NCBI GenBank assembly: GCA_964252035.1
Contig: OZ176208.1
Source of the DNA: Podarcis erhardii
Lineage: Eukaryota
DNA length: 64,000 bases
Strand: one strand, 5' to 3'
Shown in pieces: positions 16,969 to 18,400 of this stretch. The position numbers and the translations under genes were made by a program. The notes under the pieces are model-generated. The model ran no database searches. It was given only the letters and a program-made list of their open reading frames with translations, and was not told the DNA's origin. Numbering within the stretch: position 1 is the stretch's first letter; each line of letters opens with the position of its first letter.

Positions 16969-18400
16969 GTAAATCCTCATGTGGGTTCTTCTTTTATATT
17001 CTTTCTTATATGATAAGGAATTTTCATTGCATGTTCCACAATGCCTTTAACCTTAAGAACTATCACTTTAAAATGATTCCAAAGATGTATGCACCATCAG
17101 CTTTATCTACAAAACACCTGGCCGCAGTCTGCTGTATGCCTCTAAGCTTTAATTCACATTTCCATAACTTTATTTTAAACCCTGATTTGTTTCATCTGCT
17201 AGAAGAAGTAAAGTAAAGAATTTTTCTGTAGCCACAAATAAACATGTCCAAACCTTTCATAAGCTGGAGGGGGATTCTGGGTAGAGTCAGGCAGATGATG
17301 CATCCAACTGTTCTTCAGAAATCCATAAATAATAACAAATGTAGCTTAAAGCTAATTTATGCATGGTAGTTATACAATCATGAACCCACCCTTTTAAGAT
17401 TGATAAGCATTTGCATTCTCCTTCTAAAAAAGAAATGTTTAGGCCTGGGGAGGAATCTACTTTTCATTAAGAAGCATGGGTTTCAAGTGCCTGGAAATAA
17501 GTGATTTGTTTTTTAAGAAGGCATTTCAAGAACGCATACTTCTCACTCTGAAAACAATCTTTTGGACTATTCTGTATCCCCTACTCTTTTTCACTCATTT
17601 GCTCTAGCTTCATTTGACAGTCCTGTCCCTTTATCCTGGCAATTTCTCTCCACTTTCTGTCCTGTTCTTGATCTTAGTTAACACACCTTCCCTTCCGTAG
17701 TGTTGTGTCCTGCACTATATTAGACTGTTCATGCCATTCAACTGTACCTATCAGTATAAAGGTTTAAAGGTGAATGGCTGGAAATAGAACAATTCAGCAA
17801 AACAGAGTTTTCGGGTAACTAATTTTCCTCTAGAGTTATGGACTTGAATTCTGTGCCTCTGTCTTCCTACTAAGAAGTTCCGCTGTATGTAATGGGACTC
17901 ACTTAAAGTGAGTGTGACTGAGGTTACTATCTTAGGGTGTTTAATGATGACACACTGTTGAAAAGTTCAGCATTATAAAGTTCATTGGAATACCCAAATT
18001 TATTGAGTGGGAAAACTCACTACTAGATGATGTGAGACAGCATATTCTGTTTTACCAGGTGTTTCTTATATGGATAAAAGGAGAAAGAGAAGCAGGCTGC
18101 TGCTTTGAGTGACAGGCACATTGTCCTCCTAACCTCCAACTCTGCCTCTGAATGTATCTTTGGCTCAATGTAGATGTCAAGGTTAACTATAGTTTGGCAG
18201 GATGTCTGGTGTATATTTGGAAGCTCATACTGTGGTTTGAGGTCTAGAATTATGGTTAGAGATGGTTTGGGGTGATCTCAGGGTTGAATTTGTGTTTATA
18301 TGCATGCATGTATATTCCTTTGTGGGGGCTTATTTGTATAGGGGCCCAGAGGCAGATTAATAGCTCTCTGTCCATCTTGTATTCAAAACTTTTGCAATTA

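What the first reader, a model, noticed from the sequence alone, without database searches (positions are those of the whole stretch)
16969..16986. MR+4 alternative donor is retained but inserts KSSW rather than KCSW
The intron begins GTAAATCCTCAT|GTGGGT, so a second GT donor lies exactly 12 nt downstream (16981). Using it gives GAA GGT AAA TCC TCA T|GG CAA, i.e. E-G-K-S-S-W-Q, a 4-residue insertion between the two zinc fingers. Human and rat MR have the known MR+4 isoform inserting KCSW at this position, and a similar insertion has been reported in Xenopus. Retention in a lizard suggests the isoform is under selection across tetrapods. Loss of the Cys suggests the extra cysteine is dispensable, or that the squamate isoform behaves differently.
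Basis: partly seen in the sequence, partly recalled or inferred. Interest (0 to 1): 0.7.

Follow-up and report, generated by a model that had tools for sequence, protein, structure and literature searches.

The report
Squamate KSSW version of MR+4
This wall-lizard mineralocorticoid receptor gene keeps the known second splice site that adds four amino acids between the receptor's two zinc fingers, but it encodes Lys-Ser-Ser-Trp instead of Lys-Cys-Ser-Trp; a viper has the same letters and one RNA read shows the site in use, so it is a lineage variant of a known isoform.

Summary
Exon 3 of NR3C2 (mineralocorticoid receptor, MR) ends at 16968. The intron starts GTAAATCCTCAT|GTGGGT, so a second in-frame GT lies at 16981. 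Joined to exon 4 (37299), it gives ...VEG-KSSW-QHNY....

This is the ortholog of the known MR+4/MRIn12 tandem donor:
- **Published forms:** KCSW in human, rat, platypus and turtle; KCSR in Xenopus.
- **Snakes:** genomic contigs from the viper Macrovipera lebetinus and a second snake-like run have the same first 21 intron bases, although 9 of 23 four-fold sites in the exon differ. The Cys-to-Ser change (TCC) is therefore old, and the donor was kept after it.
- **Amphibian-type contigs:** two share the same donor and a U-rich tract behind it.
- **Probable birds:** a group of nine unlabelled sequences has replaced the whole region and has a stronger first donor.

RNA evidence is thin. Only two reads lay on the exon in one bulk RNA-seq run. 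The only read that crosses the donor matches through 16981 and then diverges, as the +12 junction predicts.

Verdict: a real feature, a new lineage member of a known isoform, with use shown by one read. Function and the role of the missing Cys are untested. I found no paper that mentions KSSW in MR.

The parts
16829..16968 (+). NR3C2 exon 3 (first zinc finger, recognition helix, start of the lever arm; ends ...KRAVE + G of Gly)
   Evidence: zf-C4 profile 1-34. RNA reads cover 16827-16981.
16969..16974 (+). Proximal (canonical) 5' splice site GTAAAT; lacks the usual G at +5
   Evidence: U1 duplex -6.8 kcal/mol against -14 for the consensus.
16969..16980 (+). Optional 12-nt segment GT AAA TCC TCA T: completes Gly, then Lys-Ser-Ser and the first base of Trp
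   Evidence: Identical in viper contigs L001 and L018 and in L002. One RNA read contains it.
16981..16986 (+). Distal (+12) 5' splice site GTGGGT, preceded by CAT
   Evidence: The same 9-mer is in the viper and in amphibian-type L004. U1 duplex -4.8 kcal/mol. The read's match ends at 16981.
16987..17011 (+). U-rich (pyrimidine-rich) intronic tract directly behind the distal donor; candidate TIA1/TIAL1-type binding site (inferred)
   Evidence: Intron +19 to +32 is 12/14 identical with the viper and 8/14 with the amphibian-type contigs. The TIA1/TIAL1 dependence of rat MRIn12 is reported in the review PMC7616738.
37299..37416 (+). NR3C2 exon 4 (second zinc finger); acceptor AG at 37297-37298; the first two bases GG complete Gly (canonical) or Trp (+12 form)
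   Evidence: zf-C4 profile 35-69.
45887..46222 (+). NR3C2 exon 5 (hinge and start of the ligand-binding domain: [12 protein letters not shown]...KWAKILPG)

Best explanation
This is the squamate ortholog of the tandem 5' splice site at the end of NR3C2 exon 3, which makes the MR+4 (MRIn12) isoform in other tetrapods. The spliceosome can cut at GT 16969 (canonical MR) or at GT 16981. The second choice keeps 12 intron bases and inserts Lys-Ser-Ser-Trp after the Gly that corresponds to human Gly633. That lengthens the 'lever arm' linking the DNA-reading helix of finger 1 to the dimerisation loop of finger 2. This is also where GR-gamma inserts one Arg. Both donors pair weakly with U1, so they can compete. 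The U-rich tract just behind the distal donor probably recruits TIA1/TIAL1-type proteins that favour it; this step is inferred from rat work. The Cys of the ancestral KCSW became Ser (TGC to TCC, one base) before lacertids and snakes split, and the donor and its surroundings were kept afterwards. Shown here: the sequence, its orthology, its conservation in a viper, and one RNA read with the predicted break point. Inferred: regulation by TIA1/TIAL1, any effect on transcription, and that the Cys is dispensable.
For: Gene identity. Known isoform at this position. Viper conservation: Macrovipera lebetinus WGS contigs (L001 and L018; run identity from PMC12377087) and L002 carry the identical first 21 intron bases, while 20 of 140 exon bases and 9 of 23 four-fold sites differ. 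P(15/15 for +7 to +21) is 0.006 against the local intron background of 0.71 identity, and 0.0006 against the four-fold rate. Deep conservation: amphibian-type L004 and L007 share 17/22 and 16/22 bases at +7 to +28, with nothing alignable to the window beyond +28. L007 reads KCS+R, like the published Xenopus form. RNA: in bulk RNA-seq run X23, one read matches at 99% or more from 16872 to 16981 and then runs on for 20 or more unlike letters. A canonical junction would end the match at 16969, and unspliced RNA would match to about 17022. Both reads have the strand expected for a + strand gene. Donor strengths: U1 duplex -6.8 (proximal) and -4.8 (distal) kcal/mol. Sequences that lack the distal donor have a stronger proximal donor, -9.5 to -10. 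Lever-arm position of G633 and the GR-gamma parallel.
Against: Only one informative read from one run of unknown tissue. Its 41 overhanging letters were not shown, so the join to exon 4 is inferred from the break point. About 465 nt of intron 3 aligns between lizard and viper at about 74%, so conservation near the donor is not unique to the 12 nt. Only two squamate families were sampled (Lacertidae and Viperidae, plus one unlabelled snake-like run). Geckos, skinks, iguanians and tuatara were not seen. The isoform is dispensable in at least one large clade (probable birds) and was not detected in mouse. I could not inspect any full-length annotated squamate MR isoform.
Confidence: 0.78

Rival explanations
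1. The second GT is a conserved by-product. The first tens of bases of intron 3 are kept for another reason, such as an intronic enhancer of the weak canonical donor or a transcriptional control element. The +12 product is low-level splicing noise with no function of its own in squamates.
For: The lizard and viper introns align for about 465 nt at 74%, with a further 32/32 block at 17234-17265, so the region is generally constrained. Probable birds do without the site. The variant was not detected in mouse. Only one read was seen.
Against: The lineage that lost the tract still has an intact exon 3, and it lost the distal donor and gained a stronger proximal donor together. That fits a unit serving the distal donor. 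The reading frame, the K-x-S codons and the distal 9-mer are kept from amphibian-type contigs to squamates. In human cells the inserted form changes reporter activation by about 50% on one promoter. The only donor-crossing read uses the distal site.
Confidence: 0.17
2. The single supporting read is an artefact (a chimeric cDNA, a template switch, or a structural variant of the DNA), and the distal donor is not used in this species.
For: n = 1. The overhang letters were not displayed.
Against: The break falls on the exact base predicted (16981, allowing for the G shared by the intron and exon 4), out of about 110 possible positions in that read. The read is 99% or more identical up to that base and has the strand of the gene.
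Confidence: 0.05

Closest known systems
MR+4 / MRIn12 isoform of human and rat NR3C2 (Bloem et al. 1995; MR-988 of Katsu and Baker 2024)
   Same: Same gene, same exon 3 / intron 3 boundary, a second donor exactly 12 nt downstream, and four residues inserted after the lever-arm Gly between the two zinc fingers. Lys, the second Ser and Trp are the same. A U-rich tract lies behind the distal donor.
   Different: The second residue is Ser (TCC) instead of Cys, so no extra thiol sits next to the zinc-binding cysteines. Abundance and tissue pattern in lizards are unknown.
Xenopus laevis MR with KCSR, and turtle and platypus MR with KCSW (GenBank models cited in PMC11203319)
   Same: Same insertion point. 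The contigs L007-L009 found here read GTAAATGCTCAC|GTGGGA, which gives KCS+R. This shows the same genomic design, with variation allowed at single residues.
   Different: The variable residue there is the fourth (Trp/Arg). Here it is the second (Cys/Ser).
GR-gamma (NR3C1), a one-Arg insertion from a tandem donor 3 nt downstream
   Same: Paralogous gene, same exon boundary, same lever-arm position, same tandem-donor principle. The review links both to TIA1/TIAL1 (the title of Rivers et al. 2009 speaks of conserved tandem donors and intronic motifs in both genes).
   Different: 3 nt and one residue instead of 12 nt and four residues.
Lamprey corticoid receptor CR1 with TRQG insert (PMC10446182)
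   Same: A four-residue insert at the corresponding DBD position, present or absent between two isoforms.
   Different: Unrelated residues. The authors regard it as separate from the tetrapod insert because shark and lungfish MR lack it. There the insert lowers activation.

Membership tests
NR3C2 (mineralocorticoid receptor) DNA-binding domain | Two C4 zinc fingers matching Pfam zf-C4, split between exons 3 and 4 | tested here: met
   exon 3 matches profile 1-34 (E 3.7e-14) and exon 4 matches profile 35-69 (E 4.5e-12).
NR3C2 (mineralocorticoid receptor) DNA-binding domain | Closer to MR than to GR, PR or AR | tested here: met
   the best solved chain is 4tnt_A, the MR DBD (9e-23), ahead of the GR chains. 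Exon 5 begins [12 protein letters not shown], which I recognise from memory as MR hinge sequence.
MR+4 / MRIn12 tandem-donor isoform | Second GT exactly 12 nt downstream of the exon 3 donor, in frame and without a stop | tested here: met
MR+4 / MRIn12 tandem-donor isoform | Orthology of the 12 nt and the distal donor with other tetrapods | tested here: met
   GTAAAT-NN-TCAYGTGGG is shared with the viper and two amphibian-type contigs.
MR+4 / MRIn12 tandem-donor isoform | The distal donor is used in mRNA | tested here: inconclusive
   one of one donor-crossing reads breaks at 16981 as predicted. This is n = 1 and the overhang was not shown.
MR+4 / MRIn12 tandem-donor isoform | Inserted peptide is Lys-Cys-Ser-Trp | tested here: not met
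   Lys-Ser-Ser-Trp. Xenopus (KCSR) also departs from KCSW, so the exact peptide is not a strict criterion.
MR+4 / MRIn12 tandem-donor isoform | Pyrimidine-rich intronic motif behind the distal donor, with TIA1/TIAL1 dependence | tested here: inconclusive
   A U-rich tract is present at 16987-17011 and conserved. Protein dependence cannot be tested with these tools and is known only for rat minigenes.
MR+4 / MRIn12 tandem-donor isoform | Altered transcriptional output of the inserted form | not testable with these tools
   Human data only.

The most novel reading that the evidence does not exclude
In squamates the +12 (KSSW) form is a major MR isoform in some tissues, not a minor one. The only donor-crossing read uses it, and the two donors pair with U1 about equally weakly. 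Loss of the stray cysteine beside the zinc fingers would be what made higher use tolerable. Together with complete loss of the site in probable birds, this would make sauropsids a natural experiment on what the lengthened lever arm does.
Probability: 0.12. Interest if true: 0.55.

Novelty: new member of a known kind. Interest (0 to 1): 0.35.

Why it matters
The function of MR+4 has been debated since 1995. The extra Cys was suspected of disturbing zinc binding, while later modelling and 2024 reporter assays suggest a working receptor with promoter-dependent gain.

A lineage that kept the tandem donor after replacing that Cys with Ser is a natural mutagenesis result. Lacertids and snakes diverged more than 150 million years ago (figure from my own knowledge). 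The result argues that the insertion's length and position matter, or its Lys, Ser and Trp, rather than the thiol. It also gives a ready construct (KSSW) for comparison.

The distribution found here sharpens where to look for the physiological role:
- **Kept:** amphibian-type contigs, squamates and, per the literature, turtles and most mammals.
- **Replaced:** a probable bird clade, which also has a stronger first donor.
- **Not detected:** mouse.

It does not change how the system is understood.

Tried and rejected
1. **Junction counts by tissue.** I used the break point at the donor instead. X24 gave no reads, X9 no contig, and X1 only an intronic piece. The runs marked 'RNA?' could not be pursued.
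2. **Annotated full-length squamate MR isoforms.** The word search only sees proteins 0.55-1.75 times the query length, and no long MR query can be given by reference because exon 2 is outside the window. Two searches with the exon 3 read-through ORF returned genomic read-through fragments only. I did not run the big representative search because of the operators' cost note: the protein's identity is not open, and 50% clusters cannot separate isoforms.
3. **Spliced DBD peptide.** Exon 3 + 12 nt + exon 4 has no reference, so I did not type it into the fold or search tools. No structure model of the KSSW lever arm was made.
4. **RNA structure around the two donors.** No signal: MFE -17 kcal/mol, z = -0.97.
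5. **Naming taxa of Logan and ENA contigs from run accessions in papers.** This worked for 1 of 3 searches. L002, L003-L006 and L010-L017 stay unlabelled.
   - The 'bird' label for the L003 group rests on a CR1-type 3' end (GGTCCCTTCCAACC... followed by two ATTCTGTG units) in L010. I recognise that from my own knowledge of avian CR1.
   - The 'amphibian' label for L004/L005 rests on more than 1 kb of 71-75% alignment with the Xenopus-like L007.
6. **P0004 (reads KCSH).** No DNA was available.
7. **Rivers et al. 2009.** The paper is not held, so its content is cited through the review.

Full report
**What is in the window**

The + strand carries three exons of NR3C2, the mineralocorticoid receptor (MR) gene.
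- **Exon 3** is 16829-16968 and encodes ...[37 protein letters not shown] plus the first base of Gly.
- **Exon 4** is 37299-37416 and encodes [38 protein letters not shown].
- **Exon 5** is 45887-46222 and begins [12 protein letters not shown].

Pfam zf-C4 matches exon 3 over profile positions 1-34 and exon 4 over positions 35-69. The intron therefore sits exactly between the two fingers. The best solved structure match for exon 4 is the human MR DBD, 4tnt. Exon 2 is not in the window. Earlier notes of this scan call the genome a wall lizard, Podarcis. I did not test that myself.

**The observation**

Intron 3 begins GTAAATCCTCAT followed by GTGGGT (16969-16986). The second GT is at 16981-16982, 12 nt after the first. 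Reading on in frame gives GGT AAA TCC TCA T, and the T joins GG of exon 4 to make TGG.

**What is known**

A 12-nt insertion at this boundary, from a second donor, was described for human and rat MR in 1995 (MRIn12, or MR+4; KCSW).
- GenBank models with KCSW exist for platypus and turtle, and a model with KCSR exists for Xenopus laevis.
- In human cells the inserted form raised aldosterone activation by about 50% on a TAT3 reporter but not on MMTV.
- A review reports that in rat minigenes TIA1/TIAL1 over-expression raises the variant and knock-down abolishes it. It also reports that the variant was not detected in mouse (citing Rivers et al. 2009, which is not held).
- The insertion follows Gly633, a solvent-exposed lever-arm residue. 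GR-gamma inserts one Arg at the same place.
- No paper in the library holds 'KSSW' together with 'mineralocorticoid', and a search for squamate MR inserts found nothing relevant.

**Related sequences**

I searched the protein collection with the genomic ORF that reads from exon 3 into the intron (16806-17213, then 16830-17009). This returns the same read-through from other animals' genomic contigs. I then fetched their DNA. Three classes appear (alignment A2).

- **Snakes.** L001 and L018 come from the two whole-genome runs of the viper Macrovipera lebetinus lebetinus (run numbers named in PMC12377087). L002 is 94% identical to them and comes from another run. All three have the first 21 intron bases identical to the lizard, including TCC (Ser) and CAT|GTGGGT.
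- **Amphibian-type contigs.** L007-L009 read GTAAATGCTCAC|GTGGGA, which gives KCS+R and matches the published Xenopus form. L004/L005 read GTAAATGTTCAT|GTGGGT, which gives KCS+W. L004 aligns with L007 for more than 1 kb at 71-75%, so I take it for another amphibian.
- **Sequences without the second donor.** This group holds nine clusters at 90% identity; the DNA fetched for five of them is L003, L006 and L010-L017. The intron starts GTAAGA or GTAAGG followed by an A-rich run, with no second donor and no similarity to the other two classes. One member (L010) carries what I recognise from my own knowledge as the 3' end of an avian-type CR1 element, and the group's exons differ by only 3-11 bases. 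These are probably birds, but that is an inference.

**How strong is the conservation**

- Lizard and viper exons differ at 20 of 140 bases and at 9 of 23 four-fold sites.
- Intron +1 to +21 is 21/21 identical, and +7 to +32 is 24/26.
- The intron is alignable for about 465 nt at 74%, with a background identity of 0.71 beyond +62. The chance of 15/15 at +7 to +21 is 0.006 against that background, or 0.0006 at the four-fold rate.
- Against the amphibian-type contigs, +7 to +28 is 17/22 and 16/22 identical, and nothing aligns with the window beyond +28. The chance is about 1e-5 to 1e-3, depending on the assumed random identity of 0.3 to 0.4.

The 12 nt, the distal donor and the U-rich tract behind it are therefore an old tetrapod element. 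The Cys-to-Ser change needs one base (TGC to TCC). It is shared by a lacertid and a viper, so it predates their split.

**RNA**

Of four runs laid on 16700-17100, only the bulk RNA-seq run X23 gave reads, and it gave two (about 12% of the run was read).
- The depth table places one read at 16827-16962. It ends inside the exon and is uninformative.
- The other read lies at 16872-16981. It is 99% or more identical there and then runs on for at least 20 letters unlike the intron.
- A canonical junction would stop matching at 16969, because one G is shared. Unspliced RNA would match to about 17022.
- A junction at the +12 donor predicts exactly 16981.
- Both reads have the first mate on the minus strand, as expected for a plus-strand gene in the usual stranded libraries.

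The single informative read supports use of the second donor. It says nothing reliable about the proportion, and the overhang letters were not displayed, so the join to exon 4 is inferred.

**Mechanism**

U1 duplex energies, computed with the U1 5' end taken from my own knowledge, are as follows:

| Donor | U1 duplex (kcal/mol) |
|---|---|
| Proximal donor, lizard | -6.8 |
| Distal (+12) donor, lizard | -4.8 |
| Proximal donor in the group lacking the distal site | -9.5 to -10 |
| Consensus donor | -14 |

Two weak donors next to each other, with a U-rich tract (16987-17011) directly behind the distal one, match the published design of the mammalian site and its TIA1/TIAL1 dependence. The lineage that lost the distal donor and the tract also acquired a stronger proximal donor, which fits a competition model. 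No stable RNA structure is indicated (z = -0.97).

At the protein level the insert lengthens the lever arm by four residues. Without the Cys there is no extra thiol near the zinc sites. Whether this alters DNA-dependent allostery is untested.

**Verdict**

The feature is the squamate member of a known alternative-splicing system, with one residue changed. It is conserved in snakes, and one read supports its use. The dispensability of the Cys remains a hypothesis, although the retention pattern favours it.

**Limits**

- Only one informative read, from a tissue I do not know.
- Only two squamate families sampled.
- Several contigs are unlabelled.
- No access to annotated full-length isoforms.
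- The spliced KSSW peptide has no reference, so it was left out of the fold and search tools.

Noticed in passing
window 17234-17265: A 32-nt block about 270 nt into intron 3 (ACAAATAAACATGTCC...) is 32/32 identical to the snake-like contig L002. The whole stretch 16826-17434 aligns with the viper at about 74%. This is a candidate conserved non-coding element downstream of exon 3.
   Followed up: partly
window 11773-11871 and L006:472-567: A 99-nt stretch of intron 2 matches the probable-bird contig L006 at 72% (E 7e-8), in the same order and orientation relative to exon 3. It may be a deeply conserved intronic element.
   Followed up: no
L003, L006, L010-L017 (intron start): In the clade without the second donor, the first donor is GTAAGA or GTAAGG (G at +5) instead of GTAAAT, and it is followed by an A-rich and then a T-rich run. 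Loss of the tandem site goes with a stronger canonical site.
   Followed up: partly
protein P0004 (no DNA available): An amphibian-like read-through reads KCSH instead of KCSC. The codon that holds the second GT is therefore His (CAY), and the distal donor may have been lost independently in that species.
   Followed up: no
window 45925-45965 (exon 5): The hinge carries a short Gln/Pro run (QQQQQPPPQ) encoded by CAG and CCN repeats. This is a length-variable spot worth comparing between species.
   Followed up: no
window 48655-49131 (-) and 41347-41829 (-): The first is a 158-aa ORF that may be a fragment of a transposable-element protein (not tested). The second is a long run of Ile codons in an ORF, which reflects a simple ATT-type repeat. 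Both lie in NR3C2 introns.
   Followed up: no
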